Position numbers and translations under genes: made by a program. Shown one piece after another: positions 14,471 to 57,420 of a stretch of DNA of 64,000 nucleotides; position 1 is the first letter of the stretch; each line of letters opens with the position of its first letter. This DNA is from Schmidtea nova (Eukaryota), in assembly GCA_044892505.1 (NCBI GenBank), contig CM097882.1, positions 1 through 64,000 of the forward strand, read 5' to 3'. The notes under the pieces were generated by a model, which was not told the DNA's origin, made no database searches, and saw only the letters and a list, made by a program, of their open reading frames with translations.

Positions 14471-16754
14471 CCCACAGATTATATGTTGTAGACATGCCCG
14501 GATGGTGAAGGTTGTGGATGTGGTTGAAAGCTTCGCGCCTTAGCTTTTCTTGCAAGATTGGGCGGATATTTCCAGATAAGGCGTTGTCGTAGTAGATGCA
14601 TTTATCGAAAACCGTTGTATTTTGGAAGAATGACAGGTCTCTTGGGGAAGGTGGTGATGCCCAAGGGGAATTCGATCGGTGGATAGTACCGGCTTCGAGT
14701 AGCTTATTGAATTCTTCCTTGACAAGTGTGAGCTTCTTGGGCGCGAGTGGTCGCATACGTTCTCTGATAGGCATACCGTTATTGGTGACTATGACGTGTA
14801 GAAAAGAGGGAGTTTGTTGGTGATTGTTTGATCTCTTTTCGACATTTGGAAACGTCTTTAGTAGTTGTTGTATATAGCAAGGTGTGGCGGGTAAGACATT
14901 GAGAGCGTCGCTACAGAGATGGTCAAGAACTTGAGCTCTAGGTGTGTGTTGTGAGAGGATTAGTTTGCGTTCTCTGCAATCAGGCAGTAAACCTTCAGCA
15001 TCGAGAAAGTCGGCACCTAAGAGTGGATGAATCACCTCGGCGACTTGGAATGTCCATGAAAAAGTTTTAGACAGACCAGGAATTTGGAATACTAAGTTTT
15101 TAGTTCCAATAGTGGAAAAGTTTTCGCCACTGGCTGTCCGGAAAGACCTTTTTTGGTTATTATCAGTTCCGAAACGATTAGGTAGGAATGAAATGATATC
15201 GCAGTGGATAACGAAGTAGATGGGGGCATCGATTTCGTTGGAGTTCTGAGAATGAGGTACGGCGGAAACAGAAAAGAGTCCACAGGTTATGGGATCGCCA
15301 TCAAAAACTGTGGGAGAGTTCGATGGCGTCTTCAGTTTTCCGACGACTTATTATATGAATTTTGATTAATGTTACTGGTATTGTGATTACCAGTATGGAA
15401 ACGGCAGCCTTCCAAGCATGTTTTGGCCTCGGTCGTAAATATTGCGTGATAGATGCAAAGGTTGCGAGGCAGGCATGTTGGAAGTCGGTTGTTCCACCTA
15501 CAACCGACATAGCAATGTTGGGCTTTGTCTCCATACGTCTTATGGTAAGAGCATATGAGACCTCGTGCAGATGTGGACCGATGTCGTTTTTGATTGTTGT
15601 CACGACTGTCTGTTCGACTTCGACCTCGGGTGTGTAGACTTGCGTCTAAATTGTCCATCCTCGATGTTAACGCAGTTATGGTGCTGACTAGGGCTCCGAA
15701 TTCAGCGTGTGGGAGGCTTGTTGTTGCGACTACCGGTGATGGAGTAACGGGTGACGTGTTGATTTCGACGATCTTGTCGGCAATTTTGGCCAGTTCTTCC
15801 AATGTTGTGTTTGGGACAACGGCCAGAATGGACTGGGCTGATGTAGGTAGTGCTTTTAAAAAGAACCTACGGAGCAGAGCGTCGTCTTTGGTAAGACCAG
15901 CCTGGATCCTTTCGAGTTGTTCCTTGGCTCGCTTCAGGAAGGCGCTTGGTCTTTCATTATTGAGAGGTTGATTTCGGAACCAAGCCTCATATAAATGATC
16001 TAATTTTGGTCGGTAGGCGTCTAACACTGCCGATTTCAATGAGTTGTAGGGCTCACTTGCCGTGGCTGCGGTTGCAATGGCGGTGGACAATGTGGTGTAA
16101 ATGGTGCTTGGAAGCATGGACAAGAGTGCACCAAACTTCTGCCCTTGAGATTGAGTGGGTAGAAAGGTTGGAGTCACTTCTAGTGCCAGGAACCACGTTT
16201 GTGGGGAGCCAACGCCGTCTAGGAAAAACGGTATTGGGGTAATAACTGGTGTTGTTTGTTGTGTTGGCGTTTGTATGTGGCTGATTTCACAGTCTGTGTT
16301 AGTCTCGTCGGTTTGCATTCCTCCAGTCAAACGAGGGACGATGTCGAAATAGGTGATGATGACTGGGGTATGTGTCGCAGATTGGGACTTCCTGACAAAG
16401 AAGTGGCGGTGTGTTTCTCTTGGGACACCAATTGCTAGGAGCAATGAAGTCATTGAGGACAATTGTGACTTCGTCGGACACAGAGGTTGCCATCCGGAAG
16501 TCTTGTTAGGACACCGGAAGAGAAACTTGTGTGATAATTGCGTCCTCTCAATGTTTAAAAAACCGGTTGATCTTATGATGTGGCTTCCATGCACCTTCAA
16601 TACCGTTAATCCCGCCCAGGGTTGTAGCGCCTTCATTTGAGAAGGGATAGGAAAAATAATAGATGTGGGAATAGAATAAAATAAAATGTTACTTAGAATA
16701 ATATAAATGTTACTGGACAAACTTTAAATGTTACTGGAGTAACTTCTGACACCA
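14424..16754 (-). mobile_element. Internally deleted Gypsy/Ty3 retrotransposon (CsRn1-like): gag, protease, RT start, integrase zinc-finger start
   Basis: PBS TGGTGTCAGAAGT (tRNA-Leu type) at 16754-16742; gag ORF 15332..16720 (PFFLDGVGSPQTWF, C/H-rich end); protease tail HPLLGADFL; RT start EFNKLLEAGTIHRSNSPWASP fused near 14650 to RPILQEKLRREAFNHIHNLHHPG. Confidence 0.88.
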
Positions 16755-20229: not shown

Positions 20230-20930
20230 ATTCTCAGTAGATTGGTATAAAAATTATTTGATTCTGAGCATTTTTGATTTTCCCCGAGTCGACCCTTTTA
20301 CGTGTAAAAATTGATCGGATAAGTCAAAATTTTCATGTTTTTAGATTGGTATAAAAAATTTTTGAATTCTGAGCATTTTTGATTTTTTGGAAATTCACCG
20401 AGTTGACCCTTTTTTTACTTTTTAACCCTTTTTGGTTCGCCATTGGAATCTCAGTAGATTGGTATAAAAATTATTTGATTCTGAGCATTTTTGATTTTTT
20501 GGAATTTCCCCTACCAAAATATTGTTTTCGAAAATACCAGACTAAAAATCCTATACAAAAATAAAGATCAAAAATCATATTCAAAATTACCAGAGTCCCC
20601 TTTTGCCCGAGAAAAATCTGGGAGTAGAAATTCCTATTCAAAATAACCAGACTAAAAATCTTATACAAAAACACTAGATCAAAAATCTTATACAAAAATA
20701 CGAGATCAAAAATCATATTCAAAATTACCAGAGTCCCTTTTTGCCCGAGAAAAATCTCGGAGTAGAAATTCCTATTCAAATAACCAGACCAAAATATTGT
20801 ATTCAGAAATCCAGATCAAAAATCCTATTCAAAAATTCCTGTACAAAAAACCCAGTCCCCTTTTTGCCCGAGAAAAATCTCGGAATAGAAAATCGTATAC
20901 AAAAAAACCAGATCAAAAATCCTGTACAAA
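20230..20930. repeat. Two blocks of tandem repeats (~110-120 bp x3, then ~120-145 bp x3)
   Basis: GATTGGTATAAAAATTATTTGATTCTGAGCATTTTTGATT occurs x3 (20240, 20345, 20457). CCAGAGTCCC(C/T)TTTTGCCCGAGAAAAATCT occurs x3 (~20590, 20730, 20853). Confidence 0.85.
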
Positions 20931-21045
20931 AAATAAATTAAATAAAAATATCATAATTATCTTTTTTCACCTTTGATCTTTTTTTATTATTATTATCAAT
21001 AATTCTCATAATGACTATAGATCAAATTTTTTTTTATAAACAATA

Positions 21046-21078
21046 ACACAATATTTCGGCACAGCCTTTATCAAGTGT
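21046..21078 (-). ncRNA. Putative minimal hammerhead ribozyme (U3:A8 variant)
   Basis: The minus strand reads ACAC-TTGATAA-A-GGC TGT GCC-GAAA-TA-T-T-GTGT, giving stem I ACAC/GTGT and stem II GGC/GCC. Confidence 0.6.
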
Positions 21079-21091
21079 GTATTTGATAAGT

Positions 21092-21124
21092 GTACTTGAT
21101 AAAGGCTGTGCCGAAATATTGTGT
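21092..21124 (+). ncRNA. Putative minimal hammerhead ribozyme (U3:A8 variant)
   Basis: GTAC-TTGATAA-A-GGCTGTGCC-GAAA-TATT-GTGT; stem I is retained through G.U wobbles. Confidence 0.55.
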
Positions 21125-21188
21125 TATTGTTTATAAAAAAAAAATTTGATCTATAGTCATTATGAGAATTATTGATAATAATAATAAA

Positions 21189-21452
21189 TTAAAATAAATT
21201 AAAAATAAATTGAAAATAAATTAAATTAAAATTAATTAAAATTAGTAAATAAAATAAAAATAAATAAAAATAAAAATAAATAAAATGACTTCATTTAAAC
21301 AAAATAAAAAAAATAAGAAATTCACTTCATTTAAAGAAAATAAGAAAATTTTTTAGGAGGGTGGGGTGGGGGAAACTGTAACATTATTACGTAATATATA
21401 CAGTTTAGGGATAAATGGCTTGGCCCCGTGTCCTCTCTATCCCCTACTTACT
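21189..21452. repeat. Second copy of the terminal module (A-rich tract, ACTTCATTTAAA repeats, G-tract, CCCCTACTTACT)
   Basis: Cores at 21288 and 21324; GGAGGGTGGGGTGGGGG at ~21356-21372; end motif at 21441-21452. Confidence 0.8.
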
Positions 21453-31879: not shown

Positions 31880-33566
31880 ATTTATCCTAGTAAAATTAAT
31901 TAAAAACTCTCAAAATGCATGTAGATATTGCATTTTCTATGTTTATTTTAGGATTAAATGATTTTTTCATCAAAGCCTCACAATTTACACGTTCATAATA
32001 ATTTTTAAAACTCCTAGAAAGTGTTTTAAAATTGGAAATATCAATGCTCTTCTTGCAAGTCTTATTATGCTCAATAATGTTACTCTTTCCGCTCTATCTG
32101 GCATGTTCTTGAACTCGTGTACAGAGATGACGGGTAGTCTCTCCAATGAATGTGTCATTACACCAATTACAAGTAAAACGATATATGAGATCAGAACACA
32201 GACCAACTGGCGTCACAGATTTATTACTGAACATGTCCCGAACTTTGCAAGACTTAGAAATTATTTTAACATTAGTATTTCCAATATATTTTATAATAGA
32301 TTTTTTAAAATTTACAAATCCCTCAGAAAACGGTAAAACTATAACAGAACCAATGCTATCATTCAAGTTACTTTTATTTATTTCATTATTATTATTACAT
32401 CAACACTATCGTTCATTCCCATAACAACATCACCTGTTTCAATCAAAGGAGCGCTATCAGGGGTATTAAACGGATCAACACCAGGAAAAAAATTTTCATC
32501 AATCACATTCAACTTATTAATACACTTATCAACAGTTTCACTCACCATTCGTTGCAAGAAACATTTTGAATATCCATTATTCTGTAGTAATTTAAGTAAT
32601 TTATCAATACTATTTATAGATTTACAATTAGTTGACGGCAATGTCCAAGAACGATAAACCAATCCCCTTATCATATTTCTTTTATATTTAAAATCACAAA
32701 AGCTTTCCGGCGATGTATACAAACTAGTATCTGTTGTTTTCCTATAAATTTCAGTTTCAAAATGTTTCTCTTTTCAATCAACAAATCAAGAAATGATATT
32801 TTAGAATTACTTTCTTCTTCAAAAATAAATTTAATATTTTTATGCAAATTATTCATATAATACAAAAAAGGCTTGACCTGTTCTTTATTCTTAAATACAA
32901 GAAAAATATCATCAACATAACGTTTATATACTAAGGGTTTATTCACACTACAATTTATAAATTTATTTTCTAAACTTGACATAAAAATAGATGCCAGTGT
33001 AGGAGCTAAAGGTGAGCCCATGGCAACACCATCAATTTGCTTATACCATTGATTATCAAAGATAAAATGGACATTAGAAGTAGCAAATGTCAAAAGTTTA
33101 CGAAAAGCAACAACATCAATAATATTATGAAGTGAAGTGTTAACACTCCATAAATTGCAACAAATATCAATCGTTTCTATTAAAGAAACATTTGTAAAAA
33201 GGCTAACCACATCAAACGAAACCATAAAGTTATCATTCCCACTCTTTTAAATTTACTATAAAAGAGGCAAGCTCAAAGCTATCTTTACATTCATATTCAG
33301 TCTTAATCAAGGGTTTCAACAAACTATCTAAAGACTTAGCAACCTTATATTGTGAAGTTTGAATCATTGACAATACAGGTCTCTTAGGTGAATTATCTTT
33401 TTGTACTTTTGGAGGACCATATAATTTAGCAGGTTGGGATCCCCGAGTCCAAATTGAATTACCAATATCCTTATCTATATGGTTATTTAAAATTAAATCA
33501 TGAAGTAGAGATATTAATATTGTTTCATCTTTTAAAGGTGGTAATTTGCAATTGTAACGAAAACTG
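31880..33566 (-). mobile_element. Penelope-like element 1 (RT + GIY-YIG), frameshifted
   Basis: KLYGPPKVQK..RPVLS, SFDVVSLFTNV, GVAMGSPLAP, YKRYVDDIF, NNGYS, LIYRFTCNWCNDTFIGETTRHLCTRVQEH. Confidence 0.92.
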
Positions 33567-34719
33567 ACAGTTTCTTATGGCTCTTTTTCTTTCTCCTATT
33601 AGTAATGCGATTTTGCGTTGAAGTGGAACGTGGCTTTTCCATGGGAGGATATGACCGCTATGTAAACTTTTAGAATATAGCTCGGTGTTTGCATTTAGTG
33701 TATCTTGGGCTTTTGTGAAACTTACTATGGTATCTAAAAACGGTATTTTACCTTCTGTGTTCGGTGTTTCAAAAGTGAATTGTATGTTGGTATTAGTAGA
33801 ATTTGCGTGTGGTAGGATTTGATTGAGAGGGATTATGGAGACTATGAAGATGTCGTCGATGTATCGTTTCCAGAAAAGTATTTTGTCCCCAAAAAAAGAA
33901 ACTGTTCAGACGCAAACAAAATACAAGAAACATTAGAAAACTTCAAAATACGATTCCTCCAAAATGGATACCCTGAAGAATTTGTAAAGAAACACTTCCT
34001 TAACGAAACATACCACAATAAACGCAACAATAGGAAACGCCAGAAACACAATAACAATAACAAACACACAACATATCTAAGATTACCTTTCCTAAATGAC
34101 ACTACAGCCAACAAAATCACCAACATTTTTAATCAAACAGATTTGCCTATCCACATCCGTCCAACGTTCATAACCTCCGCACCGTTAAAATCACAACTCC
34201 GAAAGCCACCAATTTCCAACATCTCCAAACATAAATATCTTTGCCGTTCCACAACCCGATGCTTTTGCTTTTCCAAAAATATAGTATATAAACTTTCTTG
34301 CCAAAAATGTGACGCTACTTACATAGGAGAAACACATAGAACTTTTCGCACCCGACTTAATGAACACACTAAAATCAAAACCAGTAATTATTACGAACAC
34401 TGGGAGAAAGTTCATAAAACAACTCCATCTATTGAAGAAACAAAATGCCAGATTTTACAAGAGGGATTCAAAAATTCATTACAAAGATTAGCTTCCGAGA
34501 CTTTTTACATAAAAAAATACAAACCGTCCATCAACATTCAATTCGCACAAAAAAATTAAAATAAATTTTTTCATCCAATAAAATCATTATAAAATATTAA
34601 AAAAATAATTAATGCTACTATTTAGGATTAAGTAAATATAACGATAGAAATACACACTTGATAAAGGCTGTGCCGAAATATTGTGTTATTGTTTATAAAA
34701 AAAAATTTTGATCTATAGT
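33567..34719 (+). mobile_element. Penelope-like element 2 with an inverted 5' part (33567-33896 on -; 33897-34719 on +)
   Basis: The minus part reads FWKRYIDDIF...IPFLD...RAIRNC. The plus part reads RNCSDANK...NGYP...NIVYKLSCQKCDATYIGETHRTFRTRLNEH...KPSINIQ, followed by the 3' UTR. AGAAACTGT is shared at both junctions. Confidence 0.9.
34654..34686 (+). ncRNA. Putative minimal hammerhead ribozyme (U3:A8 variant) in the PLE 3' UTR/pLTR
   Basis: ACAC-TTGATAA-A-GGC TGT GCC-GAAA-TA-T-T-GTGT, ~95 nt downstream of the GIY-YIG stop, in sense orientation. Confidence 0.65.
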
Positions 34720-34969
34720 NNNNNNNNNNNNNNNNNNNNNNNNNNNNNNNNNNNNNNNNNNNNNNNNNNNNNNNNNNNNNNNNNNNNNNNNNNNNNNNNN
34801 NNNNNNNNNNNNNNNNNNNNNNNNNNNNNNNNNNNNNNNNNNNNNNNNNNNNNNNNNNNNNNNNNNNNNNNNNNNNNNNNNNNNNNNNNNNNNNNNNNNN
34901 NNNNNNNNNNNNNNNNNNNNNNNNNNNNNNNNNNNNNNNNNNNNNNNNNNNNNNNNNNNNNNNNNNNNN
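34720..34969. other. Assembly gap (250 N)
   Basis: Run of N, beginning inside the foldback repeat. Confidence 1.
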
Positions 34970-35471: not shown

Positions 35472-36395
35472 ATGAAATTTATTATTTGTGAAAATTTTGG
35501 AGACAGCATCCAGTTCTATACAGTCAGAGGTATTTGTTGCCTGCTCTTCGCCGGTTTCAATGGGGTCTTGCTATTGTTTCTGATAAATAATAGAATTGCC
35601 TCGACTTCCGGTATGTTGCTTATAAAGGTTCAAACCGTATTAGACATTCTGATTATTTGCATTGTTCCATTTTATAATTTTCAAAATGACCCCGTTTTCT
35701 CTTCATCGTTATTCTACGCAAATTTCTATTGTTTCATTTGGTATAACAACACGATATTTTGGCTTCTCGAATCGTGGAGCACGAACTTCCTGATTTTGAT
35801 AACCTTCGAGAGGTTCATTTGTATTGCTCTGCCTATGCGTTATAAACTCGTAACCATTTTTCACGTAAAATGTGCAATGCTAGGAGCGGTTTTATTTTCG
35901 ATGATTTATTTTACAGTCACTTTTTCAATTTATCAATTTGCGATAAAAATTGCATCAAATGAAACGGTCTTTTACCGATGCCCTTGCAAGTATTCGATCA
36001 AATTGTTGTTGGCTTATGAAATTTTACTTTCATTGGGTCCTCCAGGAGTATTTACAGTTTTGAATATTTGGACAATAATCGGGTTGAGGAAAATCAAAAA
36101 GAACAAAATGTTATTTAATATCGAAGTGATAAATCAGAGGAGGAGTGATTTATTTGTAAGATTTACGGCAGCAAATCTCATTTCAACATTTTGTTATGGG
36201 GTCCTTTTCTTTAGCCTTTCAATTGGATTATTTCAAAATGCAACGAAGGTTGTTCTCATAGACCCAAATCTCATCAAATATTATTTGACCAAAGGTTTCG
36301 TTTGTCTGTCCATCATCAACCCGATAGTTTACATAATCATGTTTAAGAAGTTTAGAAGTTTCCTTCTGAGTCTGTTGAAACTGAAACGACCCTAA
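35472..36395 (+). CDS. Single-exon class A (rhodopsin-like) GPCR, 307 aa
   Basis: Seven hydrophobic segments; TM3 ITFERFICIALPMRY (DRY-equivalent ERF); TM7 INPIVY..FKKFR (NPxxY and helix 8). Confidence 0.88.
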   Translation: MKFIICENFGDSIQFYTVRGICCLLFAGFNGVLLLFLINNRIASTSGMLLIKVQTVLDILIICIVPFYNFQNDPVFSSSLFYANFYCFIWYNNTIFWLLESWSTNFLILITFERFICIALPMRYKLVTIFHVKCAMLGAVLFSMIYFTVTFSIYQFAIKIASNETVFYRCPCKYSIKLLLAYEILLSLGPPGVFTVLNIWTIIGLRKIKKNKMLFNIEVINQRRSDLFVRFTAANLISTFCYGVLFFSLSIGLFQNATKVVLIDPNLIKYYLTKGFVCLSIINPIVYIIMFKKFRSFLLSLLKLKRP

Positions 36396-37084: not shown

Positions 37085-37245
37085 TTGATCAATAATTACA
37101 TTTCTTATCTTTGATCTCTTCGTTTATATTTCAGAAATTTTCATTTTTTATAAACTATGGATCAAATTTTTAAAAAGAATTTGTGTATTTTTTATAAAAA
37201 AAATTGATCTATAGTTTAAAAAAAATGAAATTTTCTGAAATATAT
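37085..37245. repeat. Decayed copy of the PLE-derived foldback repeat with the ribozyme core deleted
   Basis: ACTATGGATCAAATTTTT (-) and AAAAAATTGATCTATAGT (+) arms; flanks match ~57190-57420. Confidence 0.6.
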
Positions 37246-37254
37246 GTTTCTGTT

Positions 37255-37990
37255 GGTGCTCTGACCATAGGCGGGAACTCTATAGTAGTTGCTGGGCTCA
37301 TAATTAATTTTCTATCAGCGGGTGTAATTGAATAGTTCTCAGTGCGTAGATTACTAATGGCAGTAATAAACCCACGTGATCATTTGTATCATCGCCCGTA
37401 TCAAATTATTCGGCATTGATCGTTAGATTTTTAATTTTATTTGGAAGAGGAATTTCTTTCTTCCATGTTCACAGTTGAATGACCTTAAATTTCGCGGATT
37501 TCTCATACGCTTTGCTCTGATAGAAATAGTATTTGACAGCAATCATTTCCATTGATCGACGGTTGAGATCAGTTAATTGATCCATTAATAAATTGAAACA
37601 TTTTACTGAGTCTTTTTTCCGATCATTGTCAACTAAGAGAATTGGTAAATGCAAATGTAGAAATATTTCCACTTCAGACAATAGAAATTGAGATTGCTTG
37701 GAGCCTGAAAAAATTGTAAAACAGCTAAATCAGTTTCCATAGCTTCAGGCAAATACTCAGAAAAAATGTTTTTTTGAACATGTATTTGGATAATAACCGT
37801 CTACTAATCAAAGAGAAAATCTGCTCTCCAGTTTCTTTCTGATTCTGAAAATACTTCTAACAACCATGGTCATATAATGCAACTCTTGTTAAGACAAATT
37901 TTTCCACCAATTTAATTTGATTTCTAATATCTTCCAATGTTGGTAGGTTAATATCTTTAACAATTTCTACATTGGTTTTAACTAATTTTA
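37255..37990 (-). pseudogene. PSMD3: 26S proteasome lid subunit Rpn3/PSMD3, decayed 5' fragment
   Basis: PTLEDIRNQIKLVEK, EAMETD, EVEIFLHL...DLNRRSMEMIAVKYYFYQSKAYE match the recalled PSMD3 motifs ([38 protein letters not shown]). Multiple stops and frameshifts. Confidence 0.82.
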
Positions 37991-40900
37991 ATTTTTGGAT
38001 TTAAAACTGTAGTTATTATTGTTTCTGTCAGAAATTAATTCAAATAAATTAACTCGATTAGCTTAATAATTTATTTTTAAAAATCCACAAGTTTTTCTAT
38101 TTTTAAACAAACACAAATAAACAAAAGTACAGTTTTTAAAAAAAAAAACATTCAAAACAAAAAATTGACAATCGAATCAAAAGAAATTAAGCTACATTTT
38201 TAAGACACAACATCTTAAAAATTTGCGTGATAGAATTAATAATAACAACAGTTGTTGTCTTAATTATTATAATGAATTTTATATTAAATGTTGTAATTAT
38301 ATCTTTGTAATTATATTTATATTTTAAACATATCTACTTACCTCCCAAAACTGAAATTTTCAATTTTCAAATTTACTTTATTAAAAATATATTTATCTTT
38401 GAAAAAAATTATTTTACGTACATAAACGTCAACTTCACATAGCATAAGGATAATGGTTACTAGCTCAATTTTCACAAATTGTCCAATTGAATTATTATAA
38501 ATTAATTTATTTGCCGTGATTGTTTTAATGTTTGTCTTATGTAGGTAATTATATGTGACATATACGTTTGCTGAAATAATTCTTGTAGAAGTTGCATCTT
38601 TTCTATTATAAATGACGATTTAACTGACCAAGTAATCACTTTTCAACCAAGAAGCCGTTGAATTGTTATTATTATTGGAACAATCATTTACCCCTGTATC
38701 GTTTGAAAAAGAATTTGGTAATAGTTCCCATCATTATCTCGAAATGACTCTCCCAAAATGAAGGTTCATTTAAAAAAAATAAGATCAAAAATAAAACAAA
38801 ATTTATTACTTTTTGTAATTTAAAATTACAATTTATAACTATTTTTCAAGAATTTCTCTTAAATGTAAAATATGAAGATTTCAGGTCATTATAAATTTAC
38901 TGACAAATTGCCTGTAATCTTGCTTGAATTTATATAATTAATTGAAGAAAAAAATATTTAACAAAATAATAAAAAAATAACTCACATTTTGGATGAAATA
39001 ATTCCAAAATATTAAATATTTAAAAAATACTAAAATTGTTATATTAAACAAAAGAATTTTAACTTAAAAATTAAATCTAAAAATATGATAAAGACTAATA
39101 TGAAATATACTTAAATTAAATTCAGACACAATGCACTATGTATGGAGGGTTGACATTAATTAGACTATATAGTTTTTTAGCTCGACATCTGGCCCACATT
39201 TGGCAACATGAAAAACTTTATCACTTCCCTTGGCACCCGTTTCTTGACAAAGTTGGTACTGTAACGAGTGATGAATGAGCTTATAAAAGGTGAGCTGTGT
39301 CTTCGCGACTGCTAATGACCAGACAATTCATTGGGTTCAGGTACCACCGATAGAAAGTTATGGTACTCTTATTTTCTGGTACCTTTATCATGTATTTAGT
39401 TTGATATTTATTCATTATTACTTTCCTAAAATCAATCGACTTTGCTTTTAATCCTCAGGCCTATTTTTCCTTTTCTATTTCATTAATATTTTTTCTCGTC
39501 TTAAGTCGTTGTGAATTCAATAATATATCCCTAAAAAACCATTTCGGTTTCAAAAATTCAAAAGGCGACGAATAAAATTATTAACAGAAAAATAAAACAG
39601 AACGCTAATTACAATGACATTTATTTAAATTTTCTATCACAATTGCAGTTGGCCTGCTATCCTTACTACTTTGCACAATTGTTTTCTTTTACTTTCTATT
39701 TTCCCTGGTCTCGGTTTTCAAATCCTATCTTCTTTTATGACTCCATTCGTCGATGTATCTGCGTTATGGGGAAATAATTCTTTTTCAGAGTAAGACAAGG
39801 GTTTTATAGCCTTACTCATGGCATCTTGGTTAGTTGATTGGTTCTTTGATATTGTAGCCCTCATACCTTGATCTTTAGTGCATGAATCTCGATTTCATCT
39901 TGGCTCACTTTGGCTTTTAGAACTTTGATTTGTTTTGGTGTGTGTTGCATCTTTCGGGGTTCAAACCAAGTGTTTCTATTTTTAGGAATCGCTGTAGGAG
40001 ATCTGTAGCCCTTTTCTCTGCATCTAATATTTGTTGGCTCATCTCATTCAGAAAGGATTTTAACCTGTATTTTGTTGTGCATATCTATAAAATAAATAAG
40101 ATCTCATAGAAATTCGTATTTATCATAATAAGTCGTATCTTCTTAAACAAAACTGTAATGTTTTTCTTATTATCCACGCAAAGGTAAAACACAAAATCAA
40201 AGGTAAAAGCTACGGTGCCCGGAAATTTTATTGAAACGACACAATTAAAATCATTCTTTCACAGAAATCCTCGATGCTTTTCGTAATTTGCTACTATTAA
40301 CTGATCCTCCCGTAGCATTCATTTCTCCTTTCTATTTAAGAGACGACGTGTTCATATACCAGACTTATTCTTTGTCCTCTTGGTGGAATTAAATTTGCAT
40401 TCTTGTTGTTCTGACTGGCGTGAACTTTATCCTTGTACCTCAAATTCACTCGCAGCTTGTTGTCAAACATTAGAAGTCATTCTGGTTACGCTGGCTCTCG
40501 GTTGATAATAATAATCTTTGGAATCGAGTGAGTTTGATAATACTCCAAATAATACGGAAAATCATGTTCTCCTTCCAGAATGATGAGAAAGCCGAGTTCG
40601 TGGAACATCCTTCATGGCGTTTTTAGAGGCAGGATAGTGTCCATTCCCTTCATGAGCTCATGCTCTTACGTGAGGTTTGTCAGTACGCACTCTACTCCAG
40701 GGTAATCCATTCGAAGTTTCAGTGGATTTGAATATACTAGATAATTTGATTCGGTTCGTAACTACAGTTTAATGCTTATCGAATGACCTTATGTAATATG
40801 TAAATTACGCGAGGTAGCGGTAAACCGAATAAAATCTCCATTCTTCGGATTTGAACAGAAAATACACAGAAATCCAAATTTATTTTGGAATTTTCGACGA

Positions 40901-42149
40901 TTTGATACGTGATTAAAGCGGTTTGCCGGGTAAACTTTTCATTTGTGTCCAATATTTGTGCCCCCCCCGTTTTCTGTAGTTTTGTTTTGATATTAGGGCT
41001 GACGTCATTATATTTATTATCATTAAATGTGATCAATAAGTGATTTCATATGCAGATTTTATTTCAATTTGGTTCGGTAAATCGCTTTACTTGACTTGAT
41101 TTATTGAGCAAGTTAGTGACCCACGCTATGTTGATCATAATCATTAGAATGGTTTCTTCGTCATTGTGCATTCCATTTAGTTTTGGTTCGTTGTTATAAC
41201 TTTATTTTATCATTCTCGTCAATTCCGAGACGAATGACATATTTTGAAGGTTTTCGAGAGCAACTCCATTATGTTGGATGTTGCCGACTTAGTCACATTA
41301 ATAATTATAGTGCCTTTTACAAATTTGTAACCCATAAAGTTTTCGATGAGAAATTGTTTGCCATTTAACTCAAACTTGATAAATATAATGTCATCTTGCT
41401 CAAAACAATATTATTCTATAATATTATTTGAATATATTTTTTTTGAATTATCAATAGTTTTTATGACCTATTATTCAAACATTCTGTAATTCAACTTATT
41501 GATTATATTTTATATTTTCAATTTTATTTGAAATTAAAACTTTACAATCTCATTTTTTTGAATTTAATAAAATTTTGTAGTTTAATTTTTAAATCAATAT
41601 TTATTAAACTTATTTGACCAAATTTTTATATTAACATCTTACATCACTCGTTGGTAATTTAGCCCAGTCCTACCTGATGTAATCGAGGGCAAACTTCGCT
41701 CCGGAAGATCGAATCGTATATAATAAAAATAATGCAGTGTATTTTATTAGTCGAACTTTGAATCATCACTTTTATATTATATCAAACATAATGATTCGTT
41801 TCCTACTCTAGTTTTCGATCACATTCTATTTGACCTGTTCAATGTCCTTGATATTGGGGTTACATAACAATTCTGCTTATGACAGCATCTAAAAAGATAT
41901 CTCAGTAAGCTTCTTTCAGAATGTATATGTAATATGAACAGTTAAATGATTTTAAAACCTTCCCGGTGGTTTTACAGTGTTGGCCTCTCATTCCGCTCTG
42001 TAGCAACTGTTCATCACATGTTAACATAGTGGTCGTTCTCCGGCATTCCAAACTTAAGCATAAACTAAATTTATTTTGATAATATACGAATCTCCAATTC
42101 AGGGACATTTTCTGAACATATATTTGTGCGGGACATAAAGTTAGAATCC

Positions 42150-42188
42150 TGCACTGTCCCGCTGGATCCGGGACGAATGGTCACCCTA
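42150..42188 (-). mobile_element. Single DNA-transposon end (TAGGGTGACCA..GTCCCG type, hAT-like); duplicated at ~50535-50573
   Basis: GGGACGAATGGTCACCCTA with nearby GGGAC repeats. The partner end was not found. Confidence 0.5.
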
Positions 42189-43439
42189 ACAATATATACG
42201 ATTGTAAAAATTGTTATTAAAATATTAAAATATTTCAAAGCTCATTTTAATTGAGATTATTTGTCGACAAAACAAAGTTTCAACTATTTTAAATGATAGC
42301 AATTCAGGTTTTATTTTTATACATAAAGGTGTATATTTTAGTAAATTTAGATTGTAAAAGTAAATTAAGCAATGTTTTATTTGAATGTGAACCCAATTGC
42401 TACGCTAATCATAAGATTTTTAACTCAATAAAAATGGTCAACGATAATCCTTATTGAGATTTTTATTAATATTAGTGAGGCGTGAAATGTGATATTATGA
42501 AATGTATATGTATAAAGAAAACTGTTGAGCCCAGCCGAATCACCTGTAAAAACGTGTCAGGACAGCAGATGTGCGTGTTGGGTAAGCGTGTTTATGTGTG
42601 ATTGCGAGCATGTGTATTTATTCGATATAGTTTAATATTTAACAAAAACAGAATACAAAATAACAAAACTTTATTTCTAAGTAAGAACAAATTTAGAATT
42701 ACTCACAATAATAAAAATTGCATTTAATCTCGTATTTATACTATTTTTTTTGGCATTGCTTTTTCCAATCAATTCTTTTTTTGTTTCATTTATGTTCCTA
42801 TAGCAATTTTTTAATTACAATAGGAATTAATTTTTTATTTTTAACTCGAATTTTTTAATTTATTATTATTATAATTATAATAATTATTATAATCCCTACA
42901 ATAATTATGATAATAAATAAATTAATAGATAACAAAATAAGCCTTTGCTGCAAAATATGTTTTATTAATGGAAAATTTTCAATTATAAAATAATAATCCT
43001 CTTCAATCCTAATTCGAAATCTAATTGGTACCTTCATCCATTTCTGCTGATTCTTTCTCGTGAAATATTTTCTTTTTCTTTGCATGTTAAGCTGAATAAT
43101 ATAATTTTTAAATTTTAAAATCCTTTTTAATTAAAAATGTATTTTTGTTAAAAATTTAGAAATATAAAATAAACACTCTAAAATTAAAAAATTTTCGGAA
43201 TTCAAATAAAAAAAAAATTTTTTAATTTTTATCCTTTCTAAAATTTAAAATTTTTTTCCCTTTTATTGTCTGTATTCTATATTCTAATTTTCTAACCCTT
43301 TATTTTTGAATTTTTAAAAATTAATTTAATTATATGTTTATGAAATTCAGATATATTTTCTGTACTTTCTCTTTTTCTCCCCTTTTTTTCTTTTTTCTCT
43401 TTCTTCTTTGTAGAACAACATATTTTTTAACAAGGTAGT

Positions 43440-43690
43440 AAGTTGGCGGTTTCGCTTATTTCCTCTTTATAGTTTATTTTTGGTGTTTGTCTCTAATGAG
43501 AATATTTTCTTTCAGTCTGGGATTATTTTCATCGTTTTCGCTATTCAATATTCTCACTGATACTAAATTTTCTTTTTTTCCTGTCTGACATTGGTAATGA
43601 TGTCTATATACAGATGAATTTCCACCAGGATCAAGATGTTCTTTAATTCTCTGTTACAAAGTCCTGTTAGGGTCAGATCCTTGGCCCTAA
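43440..43690 (-). mobile_element. PLE GIY-YIG C-terminal fragment (duplicated at ~51825-52075)
   Basis: RTL*QRIKEHL...SSVYRHH..C...ILNSENDENNPRLKENILIR. Confidence 0.7.
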
Positions 43691-44599
43691 AGAATAAAAA
43701 AGCTAAGTTTCTAAAAATAGTAATAATAAATTACCTTATTTAGAATAATAGAATAAATAATTACTGAAAATAGATTATTAAATAAAACAATTACTATAAA
43801 TAGATTTAGGTTATTTTAGGTAATTGATAATATAGAAATAGTTAAAAATAGTAATTTTTTAATTACTAAAAATATAATAATGATTTTTATTGAGTATATA
43901 AATTCAAGATAAACAAAGAGAGCTGACCATAATTTCACAATAATTATTAGATTGAGTGTTGATAAAATAGAGGAAATCATTAGAAATCAGCGAGACGAAG
44001 GTTAATTTGTTTTAGACGAAGAATACTAGTTTGGGAGAGAAGCGAAATCGATTTATTTGAGTGAAGTTCTTTATAAAAAGATAAACAATTAGCGTGGTGG
44101 ATTAAGATTATTCGAGAATCGTCTGTTACAGTGTAATTTTATTTTTGATTAAAAAGTAAAGGGATTTTCAAAAAGCGACGGTTGATTACTTCCACAGTAT
44201 TAACCGTTTTCTAAGTAAAATAAAGTAAATGATAGTTTCAATTTTAGAAGTAGAGGGAAGCAATTATCGTTTCACCACTATTCGGATAGCCTCAAAATCA
44301 CATTCTTGCTTGCCTTTTTTCTCTCATTTGTGATAGTTATGTTACTCAGGTACCAACTATTTCTTTCAGGCTGGTAAAAACAGCAGGGATCAGTGTATCC
44401 ATATCTTTGTATTATCTTTCATAAATTCTAACACAACAACAGAGATTTTGTAAATTTTATTATTAATTAAACATTAGAAAAATTAATTGTCTTTGTTTTA
44501 TTTATTTAAATAGGAACTAGCAACTTACTAAATATAAATCATAATATTTCAAATTATTATTTATAAAAAACAGTTTTATTTAATATTGGAGTCAGCTGT

Positions 44600-45000
44600 G
44601 TTAAGATTAATAACCACCACTTTTGATCTTAACAGTCTGAAGGGTGCTTCCGATGTAAATTTCTTCGTATTTATTACACATGATGCTATAGACTATGTTC
44701 TTGTGGAAGCATATTTTCTTTAATTTTTGGCAGTTTGCCATCTTACAGGTATTTTCTTTTCGGGTTAAGCTCTTTGAATATTGTTAGCTAACGCTACTAG
44801 TATGATCTTGTAAATAGTGAGTAATCTGTTTTTACTTATATTGAGTGGATTATTGTTTGGGAAGATATTTATGAAGTTATATTTTATGAAAGGAAGATTT
44901 TGTAGAACCCAGTAGAGTCTCCTTAAAAAGATTGTTTCGAGACTGCTGGGGTGAATGTTATATTCATAATAGGATTGTGTGTTTGCGCGCTTGTGTTTGT
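44600..45000 (-). mobile_element. PLE linker / GIY-YIG N-terminal fragment (duplicated at ~52985-53385)
   Basis: CFHKNIVYSIMCNKYEEIYIGST. Confidence 0.65.
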
Positions 45001-45136
45001 ACAGAATATATTAATAAACAACCAACTTTAAACGATTAAAATTAAAAAATTTTATTGAATACGATTAAAGTTAACAGTTACTCACGTATGTTCAGATTAA
45101 AACACAGTAAATGTTCTCAAAAAAATGGATTTTATT

Positions 45137-45636: not shown

Positions 45637-48600
45637 GTTGGTGCTCTGACCATAGGCGGGAACTCTATAGTAGTTGCTGGGCTCATAATTAATTTTCTAT
45701 CAGCGGGTGTAATTGAATAGTTCTCAGTGCGTAGATTACTAATGGCAGTAATAAACCCACGTGATCATTTGTATCATCGCCCGTATCAAATTATTCGGCA
45801 TTGATCGTTAGATTTTTAATTTTATTTGGAAGAGGAATTTCTTTCTTCCATGTTCACAGTTGAATGACCTTAAATTTCGCGGATTTCTCATACGCTTTGC
45901 TCTGATAGAAATAGTATTTGACAGCAATCATTTCCATTGATCGACGGTTGAGATCAGTTAATTGATCCATTAATAAATTGAAACATTTTACTGAGTCTTT
46001 TTTCCGATCATTGTCAACTAAGAGAATTGGTAAATGCAAATGTAGAAATATTTCCACTTCAGACAATAGAAATTGAGATTGCTTGGAGCCTGAAAAAATT
46101 GTAAAACAGCTAAATCAGTTTCCATAGCTTCAGGCAAATACTCAGAAAAAATGTTTTTTTGAACATGTATTTGGATAATAACCGTCTACTAATCAAAGAG
46201 AAAATCTGCTCTCCAGTTTCTTTCTGATTCTGAAAATACTTCTAACAACCATGGTCATATAATGCAACTCTTGTTAAGACAAATTTTTCCACCAATTTAA
46301 TTTGATTTCTAATATCTTCCAATGTTGGTAGGTTAATATCTTTAACAATTTCTACATTGGTTTTAACTAATTTTAATTTTTGGATTTAAAACTGTAGTTA
46401 TTATTGTTTCTGTCAGAAATTAATTCAAATAAATTAACTCGATTAGCTTAATAATTTATTTTTAAAAATCCACAAGTTTTTCTATTTTTAAACAAACACA
46501 AATAAACAAAAGTACAGTTTTTAAAAAAAAAAACATTCAAAACAAAAAATTGACAATCGAATCAAAAGAAATTAAGCTACATTTTTAAGACACAACATCT
46601 TAAAAATTTGCGTGATAGAATTAATAATAACAACAGTTGTTGTCTTAATTATTATAATGAATTTTATATTAAATGTTGTAATTATATCTTTGTAATTATA
46701 TTTATATTTTAAACATATCTACTTACCTCCCAAAACTGAAATTTTCAATTTTCAAATTTACTTTATTAAAAATATATTTATCTTTGAAAAAAATTATTTT
46801 ACGTACATAAACGTCAACTTCACATAGCATAAGGATAATGGTTACTAGCTCAATTTTCACAAATTGTCCAATTGAATTATTATAAATTAATTTATTTGCC
46901 GTGATTGTTTTAATGTTTGTCTTATGTAGGTAATTATATGTGACATATACGTTTGCTGAAATAATTCTTGTAGAAGTTGCATCTTTTCTATTATAAATGA
47001 CGATTTAACTGACCAAGTAATCACTTTTCAACCAAGAAGCCGTTGAATTGTTATTATTATTGGAACAATCATTTACCCCTGTATCGTTTGAAAAAGAATT
47101 TGGTAATAGTTCCCATCATTATCTCGAAATGACTCTCCCAAAATGAAGGTTCATTTAAAAAAAATAAGATCAAAAATAAAACAAAATTTATTACTTTTTG
47201 TAATTTAAAATTACAATTTATAACTATTTTTCAAGAATTTCTCTTAAATGTAAAATATGAAGATTTCAGGTCATTATAAATTTACTGACAAATTGCCTGT
47301 AATCTTGCTTGAATTTATATAATTAATTGAAGAAAAAAATATTTAACAAAATAATAAAAAAATAACTCACATTTTGGATGAAATAATTCCAAAATATTAA
47401 ATATTTAAAAAATACTAAAATTGTTATATTAAACAAAAGAATTTTAACTTAAAAATTAAATCTAAAAATATGATAAAGACTAATATGAAATATACTTAAA
47501 TTAAATTCAGACACAATGCACTATGTATGGAGGGTTGACATTAATTAGACTATATAGTTTTTTAGCTCGACATCTGGCCCACATTTGGCAACATGAAAAA
47601 CTTTATCACTTCCCTTGGCACCCGTTTCTTGACAAAGTTGGTACTGTAACGAGTGATGAATGAGCTTATAAAAGGTGAGCTGTGTCTTCGCGACTGCTAA
47701 TGACCAGACAATTCATTGGGTTCAGGTACCACCGATAGAAAGTTATGGTACTCTTATTTTCTGGTACCTTTATCATGTATTTAGTTTGATATTTATTCAT
47801 TATTACTTTCCTAAAATCAATCGACTTTGCTTTTAATCCTCAGGCCTATTTTTCCTTTTCTATTTCATTAATATTTTTTCTCGTCTTAAGTCGTTGTGAA
47901 TTCAATAATATATCCCTAAAAAACCATTTCGGTTTCAAAAATTCAAAAGGCGACGAATAAAATTATTAACAGAAAAATAAAACAGAACGCTAATTACAAT
48001 GACATTTATTTAAATTTTCTATCACAATTGCAGTTGGCCTGCTATCCTTACTACTTTGCACAATTGTTTTCTTTTACTTTCTATTTTCCCTGGTCTCGGT
48101 TTTCAAATCCTATCTTCTTTTATGACTCCATTCGTCGATGTATCTGCGTTATGGGGAAATAATTCTTTTTCAGAGTAAGACAAGGGTTTTATAGCCTTAC
48201 TCATGGCATCTTGGTTAGTTGATTGGTTCTTTGATATTGTAGCCCTCATACCTTGATCTTTAGTGCATGAATCTCGATTTCATCTTGGCTCACTTTGGCT
48301 TTTAGAACTTTGATTTGTTTTGGTGTGTGTTGCATCTTTCGGGGTTCAAACCAAGTGTTTCTATTTTTAGGAATCGCTGTAGGAGATCTGTAGCCCTTTT
48401 CTCTGCATCTAATATTTGTTGGCTCATCTCATTCAGAAAGGATTTTAACCTGTATTTTGTTGTGCATATCTATAAAATAAATAAGATCTCATAGAAATTC
48501 GTATTTATCATAATAAGTCGTATCTTCTTAAACAAAACTGTAATGTTTTTCTTATTATCCACGCAAAGGTAAAACACAAAATCAAAGGTAAAAGCTACGG

Positions 48601-55970: not shown

Positions 55971-57189
55971 AGATATAATTAAATTAATTTAAAAAAAATC
56001 AAATATAAAGGGTTAGAAAATTGGAATATAAAACACAGACAATAAAAAGGAAAACATTTTTAAACTTTAGAACGTATAAAAACTTTTTTTGATTTGAAAT
56101 TGAAAAGACCTTTTTAAAAAAAGTAGAAGATTAATATTGATTTCGAAAAATTTTTAATTTTAGAGTGTTTATTTTATATTTTTAAATTTTTAACAAAATA
56201 AACAGTTTTAATTAAAAAGGATTTTAATATTTAAAACTTATATTAATCAGCTTAACATGCAAAGAAAAAGAAAATATTTCACGAGAAAGAATCAGCAGAA
56301 ATGGATAAAGGTACCAGTTAGATTTCGAATTAGAATTGAAGAGGATTATTTTATAATTGAAAATTTTCCATTAATAAAACATTTTTGCAGCAAAGGCTTA
56401 TTTTGTTATCTATTAATTTATTTAATCCTTAATGCTGCTACCAAGGAATCACCATTTTATACTCAATAATGACCACACACGCACATCAAATACTCAAGTA
56501 GCGTGAAATAACAAAAAAGGGTCACTATGTGCCCAAATCGTGAAATGTAATAAAACTTGAACATTTAAAAAGTAAACATTGTAAAAGTAAATTAAGCAAT
56601 GTTTTATTTGAATGTGAACCCTATTGCTGCGCTAATCATCAGATTTTGAACTCAATAAAAATAGTCAATTTCTATTTAATTCAACTGTGACTGTGGTCAA
56701 TTTTCCACGGTCCAATTATAGTATGATTCATTTGTGAACTGGATCAATTGCCTGGTATATATGATGTAGACTCTACATCATATATAGATGAATGGCTAAA
56801 CAATGAAATAATATTTACAAAACGCAATCTTCAGCCTCGGCCAATTTTGTCTCGGGTGGATTGTATGTATTTGAAGTACTCGGTATTTCTATTCAATTTT
56901 GCAACTATGATTCTAGGTTGATTTCTTTCAATTTTTTATATAGTTCATCTCAGAAGAGTCATATTTATTTTTCCCGCTTTTATTTACATTACAAAGAAAA
57001 TATTTTTTTTGATCTATTGTCTGAAATAAATGAAAATTATTAAATTATTTTTTTGTGAAATTCTGACTAAATTCCAGAGTTTTTGTGAATTTTTTTAAAA
57101 ATCTTTGAAAGAACAACCAGAAAGATAAACAAATAAAAGTAAATACTCAATTATAAAGATCATATTAATTTTCCTTTGTAAATAACATT

Positions 57190-57420
57190 ATTTATAACTT
57201 TGATTTCTTTTTTCTATTTCAGAAATTTTCAATTTTTCACGACTAGATTGAAATTGTTTTTTAATGGATTTTTCGGCACAGCCTTTTTAAAGTGTTTTTC
57301 GGAATTGAAATACACACTTGAAAAAGGCTTTGCCAAAAATTTATAAGTATTAAAATAACAATTTTGGTCTGTAGTCATTAAGGAAATGAAAATTTCTGAA
57401 CTTTTTGTGAGATTTTTATT
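57190..57420. repeat. Diverged copy of the foldback repeat with two decayed hammerhead cores
   Basis: TTTCGGCACAGCCTTTTTAAAGTGT (57271-57295) and TACACACTTGAAAAAGGCTTTGCCAAAA (57311-57338). Confidence 0.7.

What the first reader, a model, noticed from the sequence alone, without database searches (positions are those of the whole stretch)
20953..21188. Foldback mini-element with two back-to-back hammerhead motifs (possible retrozyme-like system)
Seen: a ~205-bp near-perfect hairpin in which each arm begins with a hammerhead motif, so transcripts of either strand would contain one. Related pairs occur at 57190-57420 (decayed cores), 37085-37245 (core deleted) and 9475-9790, and the parent sequence is the 3' UTR of PLE2 (34650-34719). 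Established: PLE pLTRs carry minimal hammerheads that act as dimers, inverted pLTRs are common, and retrozymes are non-autonomous hammerhead retroelements. Inference: repeated recovery of the same short head-to-head form in diverged subfamilies suggests it propagates as a unit, perhaps via a self-cleaving rod-like RNA.
Basis: partly seen in the sequence, partly recalled or inferred. Interest (0 to 1): 0.75.

Follow-up and report, generated by a model that had tools for sequence, protein, structure and literature searches.

The report
Head-to-head Penelope retrotransposon end fragments
The hairpin is real and each arm carries a genuine minimal hammerhead motif, but it is best read as the usual scar of one Penelope-like retrotransposon insertion (two short inverted end-copies), not as a self-propagating retrozyme-like element.

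Summary
Window 20947-21188 is a foldback whose arms are 98.9% identical. Each arm is 98.4-98.6% identical to the stretch just 3' of a Penelope-like element (PLE) endonuclease ORF at 33819-34559.

Each arm starts at the centre with a 33-nt minimal hammerhead. Its core has U3-A8 in place of C3-G8 and one extra base before helix II. Both features are published for PLE hammerheads. Five relatives from other sources keep the same architecture, one of them with the C3-G8 core, and helices I and II covary.

The retrozyme reading is not supported.
- The two ribozymes have opposite polarity, so any transcript holds one sense copy plus its perfect complement. Forming the ribozyme costs about 48 kcal/mol against the rod.
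- No two of the four pairs in the window share a central junction.
- Exactly one arm of each pair carries the 35-40-nt PLE "tail".

Inverted short copies, a one-sided tail and paired hammerheads on opposite strands are all described for PLEs. A PLE protein has been shown in vitro to cleave and extend both DNA strands.

One regularity remains open. Arm starts cluster tightly around the hammerhead, here and in two metagenome contigs.

This is an ordinary new member of a known kind.

The parts
20947..21086 (-). Left arm: a short PLE end-copy in inverted orientation. It includes a roughly 35-nt 3' tail (about 20947-20982).
   Evidence: Aligns to PLE2 34648-34719 at 98.6%, and to copy C (9701-9796) through the tail at 88.5%.
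21046..21078 (-). Minimal hammerhead of the left arm. It has a 4-bp helix I, a U3-A8 core, one extra base, a 3-bp helix II with a 3-nt loop, GAA, and a 4-nt palindrome. The predicted cut follows 21050 on the minus strand.
   Evidence: Descriptor hit. Covariance-model score 54.3 bits.
21077..21102 (.). Central junction. The 17 nt between the perfect arms include a 13-nt tandem duplication.
21092..21124 (+). Minimal hammerhead of the right arm. Only 2 parent bases lie upstream of the core, so helix I is kept through G-U pairs. The predicted cut follows 21120.
   Evidence: Descriptor hit. Covariance-model score 39.0 bits.
21094..21188 (+). Right arm: a short PLE end-copy in direct orientation, without the tail.
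   Evidence: 98.4% identical to PLE2 34656-34719 and 98.9% to the left arm. It diverges from the tail-bearing arm after about 21188.
21175..21286 (.). AT-rich short-period tandem array that abuts the right arm. It is the likely target sequence.
   Evidence: TRF rows with periods of 6-16.
33567..34559 (+). PLE2 coding remnant, treated as one part. The C-terminal GIY-YIG endonuclease ORF of 246 codons is open. The element is 5'-truncated, and the roughly 0.3 kb that encodes the preceding part of the protein lies inverted beside it. That makes one truncation and one inversion.
   Evidence: The GIY-YIG motif is visible in the translation. There are 1587 relatives, and the long ones carry RVT_1 plus a C-terminal GIY-YIG. 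tblastn outer bounds are.
34560..34719 (+). The stretch 3' of the PLE2 ORF. It holds the parent hammerhead at 34654-34686, 95 nt after the stop codon, and is cut off by the N gap at 34720-34969.
9503..9562 (+). Solo short copy A. It has no tail, ends on (TA)n, and starts about 2 nt after the predicted cleavage site.
9634..9802 (.). Head-to-head pair B(-)/C(+). B has no tail and C has one. Both lack the core, and both ends lie on (TA)n.
37088..37244 (.). Head-to-head pair of a second subfamily. The left arm has the tail and the right arm does not. Both arms start at or after the 3' part of the hammerhead. The arms are 86% alike.
57175..57400 (.). Old head-to-head pair of the second subfamily. 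The left arm has the tail. Both arms hold decayed hammerheads. The arms are 76% alike.
   Evidence: Covariance-model scores are 29.8 and 19.4 bits.

Best explanation
The foldback is the product of one integration event of a Penelope-like retrotransposon of the PLE2 family.

**Proposed mechanism.**
1. The element's RT-endonuclease starts reverse transcription at internal sites about 70 and 105 nt downstream of the hammerhead.
2. It copies only the short stretch back to a point just upstream of the hammerhead.
3. Two such copies end up joined head to head. This happens either because both nicked DNA strands prime a cDNA, or because the first cDNA snaps back and primes its own complement.
4. The result is two inverted end-copies of about 95-140 bp, one with the tail and one without, sitting in AT-rich DNA.

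**The hammerheads.** They are passengers of that copied stretch. They are genuine, conserved PLE minimal hammerheads of the U3-A8 type. In a foldback transcript they are locked in a perfect duplex and are not expected to cleave.

**Shown here:** the anatomy, the parentage, the conservation of the ribozyme motif, the differing junctions and the tail asymmetry.

**Inferred:** the priming route.
For: **Parentage.** The arms are 98.4-98.6% identical to the sequence after the PLE2 endonuclease ORF. The ORF's long relatives carry RVT_1 plus a C-terminal GIY-YIG.

**PLE insertion signature.**
- In 4 of 4 window pairs, and in L007, exactly one arm has the tail, about 35-40 nt in the window pairs and about 28 nt in L007.
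- Copies end on (TA)n or AT-rich arrays.
- PMC8557442 describes adjacent inverted 5'-truncated copies and a tail at only one end.
- PMC4209133 reports paired minimal hammerheads on opposite strands.
- PMC11167929 shows a PLE protein that cleaves and extends both strands. It has two internal RT start sites that define the tail, and a hammerhead about 90 nt upstream of them.

**Independent events.**
- The junctions differ in every pair.
- L007 shows the textbook form: an inverted arm, then a direct arm, then a truncated ORF.

**The ribozyme is real as a motif.**
- Six independent elements (PLE2 and five relatives; the two hairpin arms are near-identical copies of PLE2's) share the same spacing. 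Seven of the 8 distinct sequences have U3-A8 and one has C3-G8.
- 83% of cells are paired, against 30-50% in the slid controls.
- 9 of 11 pairs change on both sides, and 0 of 500 shuffles reach the observed covariation score.
- The isolated 41-nt segment folds into helices I and II at its energy minimum.
Against: - Only nine short copies in one window and two pairs elsewhere were seen. No genome-wide census was possible.
- No target-site duplication could be read in the AT-rich flanks.
- Arms B and C are no more alike (88%) than each is to other copies, so that pair could be two separate insertions.
- Arm starts are not random but cluster around the hammerhead. Plain 5' truncation does not predict that.
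- The dual-strand priming evidence comes from a different PLE, from Anolis, tested in vitro.
Confidence: 0.75

Rival explanations
1. The foldback is a non-autonomous element that is transcribed, self-cleaves and is copied as a unit, in the manner of a retrozyme.
For: - A short head-to-head form recurs in two subfamilies in the window, and in contigs L007 and L010.
- Arm starts cluster just upstream of the hammerhead.
- Animal retrozymes are thought to derive from PLE terminal repeats.
Against: - No two pairs share a junction.
- Each transcript holds only one sense ribozyme, so no unit can be excised. Retrozymes are direct tandem repeats.
- The ribozyme fold costs 48 kcal/mol against the rod, and its complement is transcribed first.
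- Minimal hammerheads need a second sense copy to form helix III.
- The hairpin arms match an ORF-linked copy at 98.4-98.6%.
Confidence: 0.05
2. Each pair is two separate insertions of short PLE copies. They landed next to each other because the endonuclease prefers AT-rich or (TA)n DNA, or prefers existing PLE sequence.
For: - Three copies lie within 300 bp in a (TA)n tract at 9503-9802, one of them solo.
- B and C are only 88% alike, no closer than to other copies.
- A PLE endonuclease is reported to recognise its own element's sequence.
Against: - In all four window pairs the 5' ends abut within 20 nt, with no target sequence between them.
- Exactly one arm has the tail in 5 of 5 scorable pairs. 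Independent use of the two start sites would give mixed pairs at most half the time, so p is at most 0.03.
- The arms of the young pair are 98.9% alike.
Confidence: 0.12
3. A single short copy was later turned into a palindrome at the DNA level, by fold-back repair or a replication error. Alternatively, the palindrome is an assembly artefact.
For: - Palindromes and gaps go together in this assembly. N gaps sit at the end of PLE2, and at the place where a second copy of the 37175 pair would be expected.
- A 2.4-kb inverted repeat flanks another gap.
Against: - The arms differ in length by the tail and have different flanks.
- The same asymmetric form recurs in two subfamilies of different age within the window. 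It also recurs in unrelated metagenome assemblies.
Confidence: 0.05

Closest known systems
Complex insertion units of Penelope-like elements: an inverted 5'-truncated copy beside a pseudo-LTR, with a one-sided tail (Evgen'ev and Arkhipova 2005, as cited in PMC8557442)
   Same: - Inverted short copies joined at their 5' ends.
- A 30-40-nt tail at one end only.
- AT-rich or (TA)n targets.
- A hammerhead in the repeated stretch.
- Association with assembly gaps.
   Different: - Here the unit has no ORF body at all. It consists only of the two short arms.
- The arm starts fall in a narrow zone at the hammerhead rather than anywhere along the element.
PLE minimal hammerheads (Cervera and de la Pena 2014, PMC4209133)
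   Same: - Type I topology, with no real helix III and a palindromic 15.x-16.x stretch.
- One base between positions 9 and 10.1.
- A G10.1-C11.1 pair and a short helix I.
- A U3-A8 core variant.
- Paired motifs on opposite strands are also reported.
   Different: - Helix II is only 3 bp with a 3-nt loop, against 6-8 bp in the Schistosoma and Drosophila examples.
- The two motifs are about 20-40 nt apart, against the reported 100-700 bp.
Metazoan non-LTR retrozymes (PMC7229834; bioRxiv 10.64898/2026.07.22.740005)
   Same: Short, non-coding, hammerhead-bearing sequences related to PLE terminal repeats and found in AT-rich animal genomes.
   Different: - Retrozymes are direct tandem repeats of 150-450 bp.
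- They carry canonical hammerheads with loop-loop contacts.
- They give unit-length circular RNAs.
- Here the repeats are inverted, the ribozymes are minimal, and there is one sense ribozyme per transcript.
Twin-priming inversions of LINE-1
   Same: Both strands of the target act as primers in one event, giving an inverted 5' part. The PLE2 remnant itself has such an inverted upstream piece.
   Different: In twin priming the two parts cover different stretches of the RNA. In the foldback both arms cover the same stretch.

Membership tests
PLE-type minimal hammerhead ribozyme | Conserved core boxes: positions 3-9, with 3 and 8 able to pair, and G12-A13-A14. | tested here: met
   The core carries U3-A8. 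Among the 8 distinct aligned sequences, U4, G5, A6, A9, A13 and A14 are invariant. G12 is invariant in all but the decayed copy. Relative L003 has C3-G8. PMC4209133 reports the U3-A8 variant.
PLE-type minimal hammerhead ribozyme | Helices I and II are kept by compensatory change. | tested here: met
   83% of cells are paired, against 30-50% when the partners are slid. 9 of 11 pairs change on both sides, and 0 of 500 shuffles reach the observed score. Caveats: there are only 8 distinct sequences, and two of them were picked by a descriptor that required pairing.
PLE-type minimal hammerhead ribozyme | An extra base between positions 9 and 10.1, a G10.1-C11.1 pair, and a palindromic 15.x-16.x stretch. 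| tested here: met
   All three features are present in both arms and in PLE2. The spacing is the same in five relatives. The features are listed in PMC4209133.
PLE-type minimal hammerhead ribozyme | Self-cleavage. | not testable with these tools
   Published minimal hammerheads cleave poorly in vitro and need a dimer or a protein.
Rfam hammerhead families | A score at or above a family's gathering cut-off. | tested here: not met
   There is no hammerhead hit even at E <= 10. This says little, because the canonical-core relative L003 reaches only 16.8 bits against a cut-off of 52.
Penelope-like element, endonuclease-positive | A reverse transcriptase followed by a C-terminal GIY-YIG endonuclease. 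| tested here: met
   The PLE2 remnant keeps the endonuclease part and about 100 residues upstream of it. Full-length relatives carry RVT_1 plus GIY-YIG. Pfam itself gives no hit on the window ORF.
Penelope-like element, endonuclease-positive | Insertion units with inverted truncated copies and a 30-40-nt tail at one end. | tested here: met
   The definition is in PMC8557442.
Hydra clade of PLEs | The CCHH motif is absent from the endonuclease, and insertion is into (TA)n. | tested here: inconclusive
   (TA)n ends are seen. However, two Cys between the GIY and YIG boxes and two His downstream are invariant in 17 relatives. That looks like a CCHH motif. No reference clade sequences were available, so the clade is left open.
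Retrozyme | Two or more hammerheads of the same polarity in direct repeats, bounding a unit. | tested here: not met
   The two motifs lie on opposite strands. No direct or tandem copy of the unit occurs in the window.
Retrozyme | Copies share unit boundaries. | tested here: not met
   The junctions differ in all pairs.
Retrozyme | Unit-length linear and circular RNAs. | not testable with these tools
   No expression data were available.
microRNA or hairpin-RNA gene | A match to a curated family at its gathering score. | tested here: not met
   The miRNA-family hits (MIR447, mir-31 and others) are all below their cut-offs and occur on both strands. They reflect hairpin shape only.

The most novel reading that the evidence does not exclude
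The junctions are not random.
- In 4 pairs from 3 sources, all 8 arms start 2-17 nt upstream of the hammerhead core.
- The other 5 window copies start from 6 nt before to 12 nt after the predicted cleavage site.
- Exactly one arm per pair carries the tail.

This could mean that the arms are run-off cDNAs. They would be made from the RT start sites nearest the 5' end of the RNA, back to the 5' end of intact or ribozyme-processed PLE RNA. They would then be joined by snap-back or two-strand priming. If so, such foldbacks would be genomic footprints of the PLE transcript's 5' end and of hammerhead action in vivo. A transcribed foldback would also be a ready source of double-stranded RNA against its own family.
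Probability: 0.25. Interest if true: 0.55.

Novelty: new member of a known kind. Interest (0 to 1): 0.25.

Why it matters
As it stands, this mainly matters for annotation. Back-to-back minimal hammerheads in a short palindrome should be read as a PLE insertion scar, not as a new ribozyme-driven mobile element. Such palindromes also coincide with assembly gaps.

A modest mechanistic point may interest PLE specialists. The tight clustering of arm starts at the hammerhead and the strict one-sided tail constrain how these elements finish integration, a step that is still unresolved in the literature. A genome-wide census of junctions could turn these scars into a map of template ends.

Tried and rejected
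- **Rfam.** I searched the whole window at gathering score, and at E <= 10 on the hairpin and on the parent stretch. There was no hammerhead hit. I judged this uninformative after a canonical-core relative scored only 16.8 bits.
- **Canonical core word.** It is absent from the hairpin. The five hits in the window are at chance level.
- **Naming the organism.** Exact look-up of a 307-aa window ORF, and of relative P0001, found nothing on record. The organism is left unnamed: an AT-rich (29% GC) eukaryote.
- **Supplements.** The supplementary files of the two key papers are not held.
- **Word-index protein search.** It gave only 2 hits because of its length window. I therefore ran the full profile search.
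- **Contig look-ups.** Three of six relatives (P0004, P0009, P0010) returned no DNA because the sample files were too large, and P0001 was not on record. The viral collection gave one irrelevant locus.
- **Hydra-clade assignment.** I first assumed it from the (TA)n targets and withdrew it after seeing a CCHH-like pattern.
- **The arm as the start of the next ORF.** A 21-codon open frame starting from an ATG runs to the end of the tail. That is too short to mean anything, and it shows no likeness to the N-termini of relatives.
- **Target-site duplications.** None could be discerned in the low-complexity flanks.
- **Clean run-off on cleaved RNA.** Rejected for two of the five copies, which keep about 6 parent bases upstream of the cleavage site.
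- **Covariance model.** I built a model of the 41-nt motif for searching.

Full report
**1. What is there**

The window is AT-rich (29% GC) and has three N gaps. At 20947-21188 lies a foldback.
- The region matches its own reverse complement over 207 bp.
- The two arms are 98.9% identical over 95 bp.
- As RNA it folds into one long hairpin of -134.4 kcal/mol, against -33.9 for shuffles (z = -24.8).
- The arms are not equal. The left arm runs about 35 nt further at its outer end.
- The centre is not a clean palindrome. The 17 nt between the perfect arms include a 13-nt tandem duplication.

**2. Where the arms come from**

Both arms match window 34648-34719 at 98.4-98.6%.
- That stretch begins 95 nt after the stop codon of ORF 33819-34559. 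The ORF's translation shows the GIY and YIG boxes, with Cys pairs around them.
- Pfam gives no hit on this ORF.
- A full profile search finds 1587 relatives. In the long ones the match lies at the C-terminus, behind an RVT_1 domain, and several carry a Pfam GIY-YIG hit.
- This is the architecture of an endonuclease-positive Penelope-like element (PLE).
- The window copy (PLE2) is a remnant. It is 5'-truncated, and the roughly 0.3 kb encoding the preceding part of the protein lies inverted beside it. Its 3' end runs into an N gap.

**3. Are there hammerheads?**

Evidence that looks negative:
- The canonical core word is absent from the hairpin.
- Rfam finds no hammerhead at any threshold I tried.

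Evidence that the motif is real:
- Cervera and de la Pena (PMC4209133) describe PLE minimal hammerheads with exactly the deviations seen here. These are U3-A8 in place of C3-G8, one unpaired base between positions 9 and 10.1, a G10.1-C11.1 pair, a short helix I, and a palindromic stretch in place of helix III that lets two copies pair.
Shuffles give 0.36 hits per window. These three are copies of one sequence, so this alone is weak.
- The stronger evidence is comparative. I fetched the 3' flanks of relatives with 40-50% protein identity from metagenome and ENA contigs. Five of them carry a motif of identical spacing 95-190 nt after the ORF.
- One relative (L003) has the canonical C3-G8 core. 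The others have U3-A8.
- Helices I and II change by compensatory substitutions. 83% of cells are paired, against 30-50% when the partners are slid. 9 of 11 pairs have changes on both sides, and no shuffle in 500 reaches the observed covariation score.
- The isolated 41-nt segment folds into helices I and II at its energy minimum.
- Rfam's silence says little, because L003 reaches only 16.8 bits against a cut-off of 52.

I conclude that the motif is a genuine, conserved PLE minimal hammerhead. Its activity cannot be tested here. In the right arm only two parent bases precede the core.

**4. The other copies**

| Copy | Window coordinates | Arms alike | Hammerhead core | Arm with tail |
|---|---|---|---|---|
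| Young pair | 20947-21188 | 98.9% | intact in both arms | left |
| Solo copy A | 9503-9562 | n/a | absent | none |
| Pair B/C | 9634-9802 | 88% | absent | C |
| Second-subfamily pair | 37088-37244 | 86% | absent | left |
| Old second-subfamily pair | 57175-57400 | 76% | decayed | left |

Three facts stand out.
- The central breakpoint is different in every pair.
- In every pair exactly one arm carries a 35-40-nt extension at its 3' end.
- The copies that lack the core lack it because they start further downstream, not because of an internal deletion.
- In addition, copies A, B and C end on (TA)n, and the young hairpin abuts an AT-rich array.

**5. The same form elsewhere**

The covariance model found two more back-to-back pairs in metagenome contigs of a related family.
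- In L007 both arms start 17 nt before the core. The inverted arm has a tail of about 28 nt and the direct arm has none. The direct arm is followed by a truncated ORF. This is the textbook PLE unit: inverted copy, pseudo-LTR, ORF.
- In L010 the arms start 8 and about 5 nt before the core.
- Two pairs of one family therefore again have different junctions.

**6. Comparison with what is known**

- Craig et al. (PMC8557442) describe PLE insertions as highly 5'-truncated. They often have an inverted truncated copy adjacent, a 30-40-bp tail at one end only and a microsatellite bias, and they cause frequent assembly trouble.
- PMC4209133 reports paired minimal hammerheads on opposite strands.
- PMC11167929 shows in vitro that a PLE protein cleaves and extends both DNA strands. 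Reverse transcription starts at two internal sites whose spacing is the tail. The hammerhead lies about 90 nt upstream of those sites, and the ribozyme needs the protein.
- The geometry here is the same. The predicted cleavage site lies about 68 nt (no tail) or about 105 nt (with tail) from the 3' ends of the arms.

**7. Why not a retrozyme**

- Metazoan retrozymes are direct tandem repeats of 150-450 bp. They carry canonical hammerheads and yield unit-length circular RNAs. Excision needs two ribozymes of one polarity on one RNA.
- In the foldback each transcript has one sense motif, so there would be at most one cut.
- Minimal hammerheads need a second sense copy to build helix III. None is present on the same transcript.
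- On either strand the sense arm is transcribed right after its perfect complement.
- Forcing helices I and II to form costs 48 kcal/mol relative to the rod.
- No direct repeat of the unit exists in the window.

**8. Best explanation and what remains open**

Each pair is most likely the scar of one integration event. Two short cDNAs of the same end stretch were joined head to head, either by priming on both nicked strands or by snap-back of the first cDNA.

Two regularities go beyond plain truncation (note 4).
- Arm starts cluster. Eight arms start 2-17 nt upstream of the core. Five copies start from 6 nt before to 12 nt after the predicted cleavage site. None reaches further upstream, although PLE2 has more than 1 kb of upstream sequence.
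- The tail is on one arm only in 5 of 5 scorable pairs. Independent use of the two start sites would give this with a probability of at most 0.03.

These regularities suggest run-off copying to a defined RNA 5' end, and a coupled, asymmetric second step. With 13 arms this is a lead, not a result. Two of the five downstream starters keep parent bases upstream of the cleavage site, so they are not simple copies of cleaved RNA.

**9. Limits**

- The organism is not identified.
- The clade of the element is open. The (TA)n targets recall the Hydra clade, but a CCHH-like pattern is present.
- I did not fill or look up any N stretch.
A covariance model of the 41-nt motif was used for searching only.
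I note this as a slip.

**10. Verdict**

The PLE origin and the hammerhead identity are supported, and the retrozyme-like propagation is not. This is a new member of a known kind, of low to moderate interest.

Noticed in passing
window 4869-8606 (+): A protein-primed type B DNA polymerase gene (Pfam DNA_pol_B_2, E = 8e-18), with a weak endonuclease VII-like stretch. It looks like a Polinton/Maverick-type gene. One in-frame stop splits it into two same-frame ORFs.
   Followed up: partly
window 1-2389 and 2822-5207: A 2.4-kb inverted repeat, 98-99% complementary, around the N gap at 2394-2552. Its right arm reaches into the start of the polymerase ORF. It could be a real palindrome or an assembly artefact.
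   Followed up: partly
window 37252-45136 and 45637-53520: A 7885-bp direct duplication at 99.99% identity, separated only by the 500-N gap. The foldback at 37088-37244 sits immediately before copy 1, so the gap lies where a second copy of that foldback would be expected.
   Followed up: partly
window 33567-34559: The PLE2 remnant has its upstream piece of about 0.3 kb inverted next to the endonuclease ORF. This layout resembles twin priming and fits priming from both target strands.
   Followed up: partly
window 31929-33433 (-): A second PLE remnant of a different family, about 30% identical to the same relatives. It has RT (Pfam RVT_1) and GIY-YIG pieces. It is 5'-truncated, and its pieces lie in three reading frames, so there are at least two frameshifts. 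The covariance model found no hammerhead after it.
   Followed up: partly
window 58009-58056 (-): A weak covariance-model hit (21 bits, E = 0.03). The sequence is hammerhead-like, with a 4-bp helix I, three extra bases inside the core box and a 6-nt palindrome. It lies directly next to (TA)n and may be the decayed end of another PLE family.
   Followed up: no
L007 1582-1776 and L010 about 1960-2112: Back-to-back hammerhead foldbacks of a related PLE family in metagenome contigs. L007 also holds an unrelated 197-nt-arm foldback at 258-705.
   Followed up: partly
L005 1521-1601 and 1647-1735: Two copies of the PLE 3' end face each other tail to tail, with 45 nt between them. This is the opposite arrangement to the head-to-head pairs.
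   Followed up: no
L001 1-54 and 1120-1173: An inverted copy of the end of the endonuclease ORF lies upstream of the ORF-bearing copy. It is another adjacent inverted copy, with a longer arm than those in the window.
   Followed up: no
window 20513-20838: A tandem array of period 138 bp (2.4 copies, 82% matches), with 13-27-bp sub-repeats, lies just left of the hairpin.
   Followed up: no
window 15332-16720 (-) and 35472-36395 (+): One ORF of 462 aa has a DUF7041 hit just above the cut-off. The other, of 307 aa, is hydrophobic, has no Pfam hit and is not on record by exact look-up.
   Followed up: no
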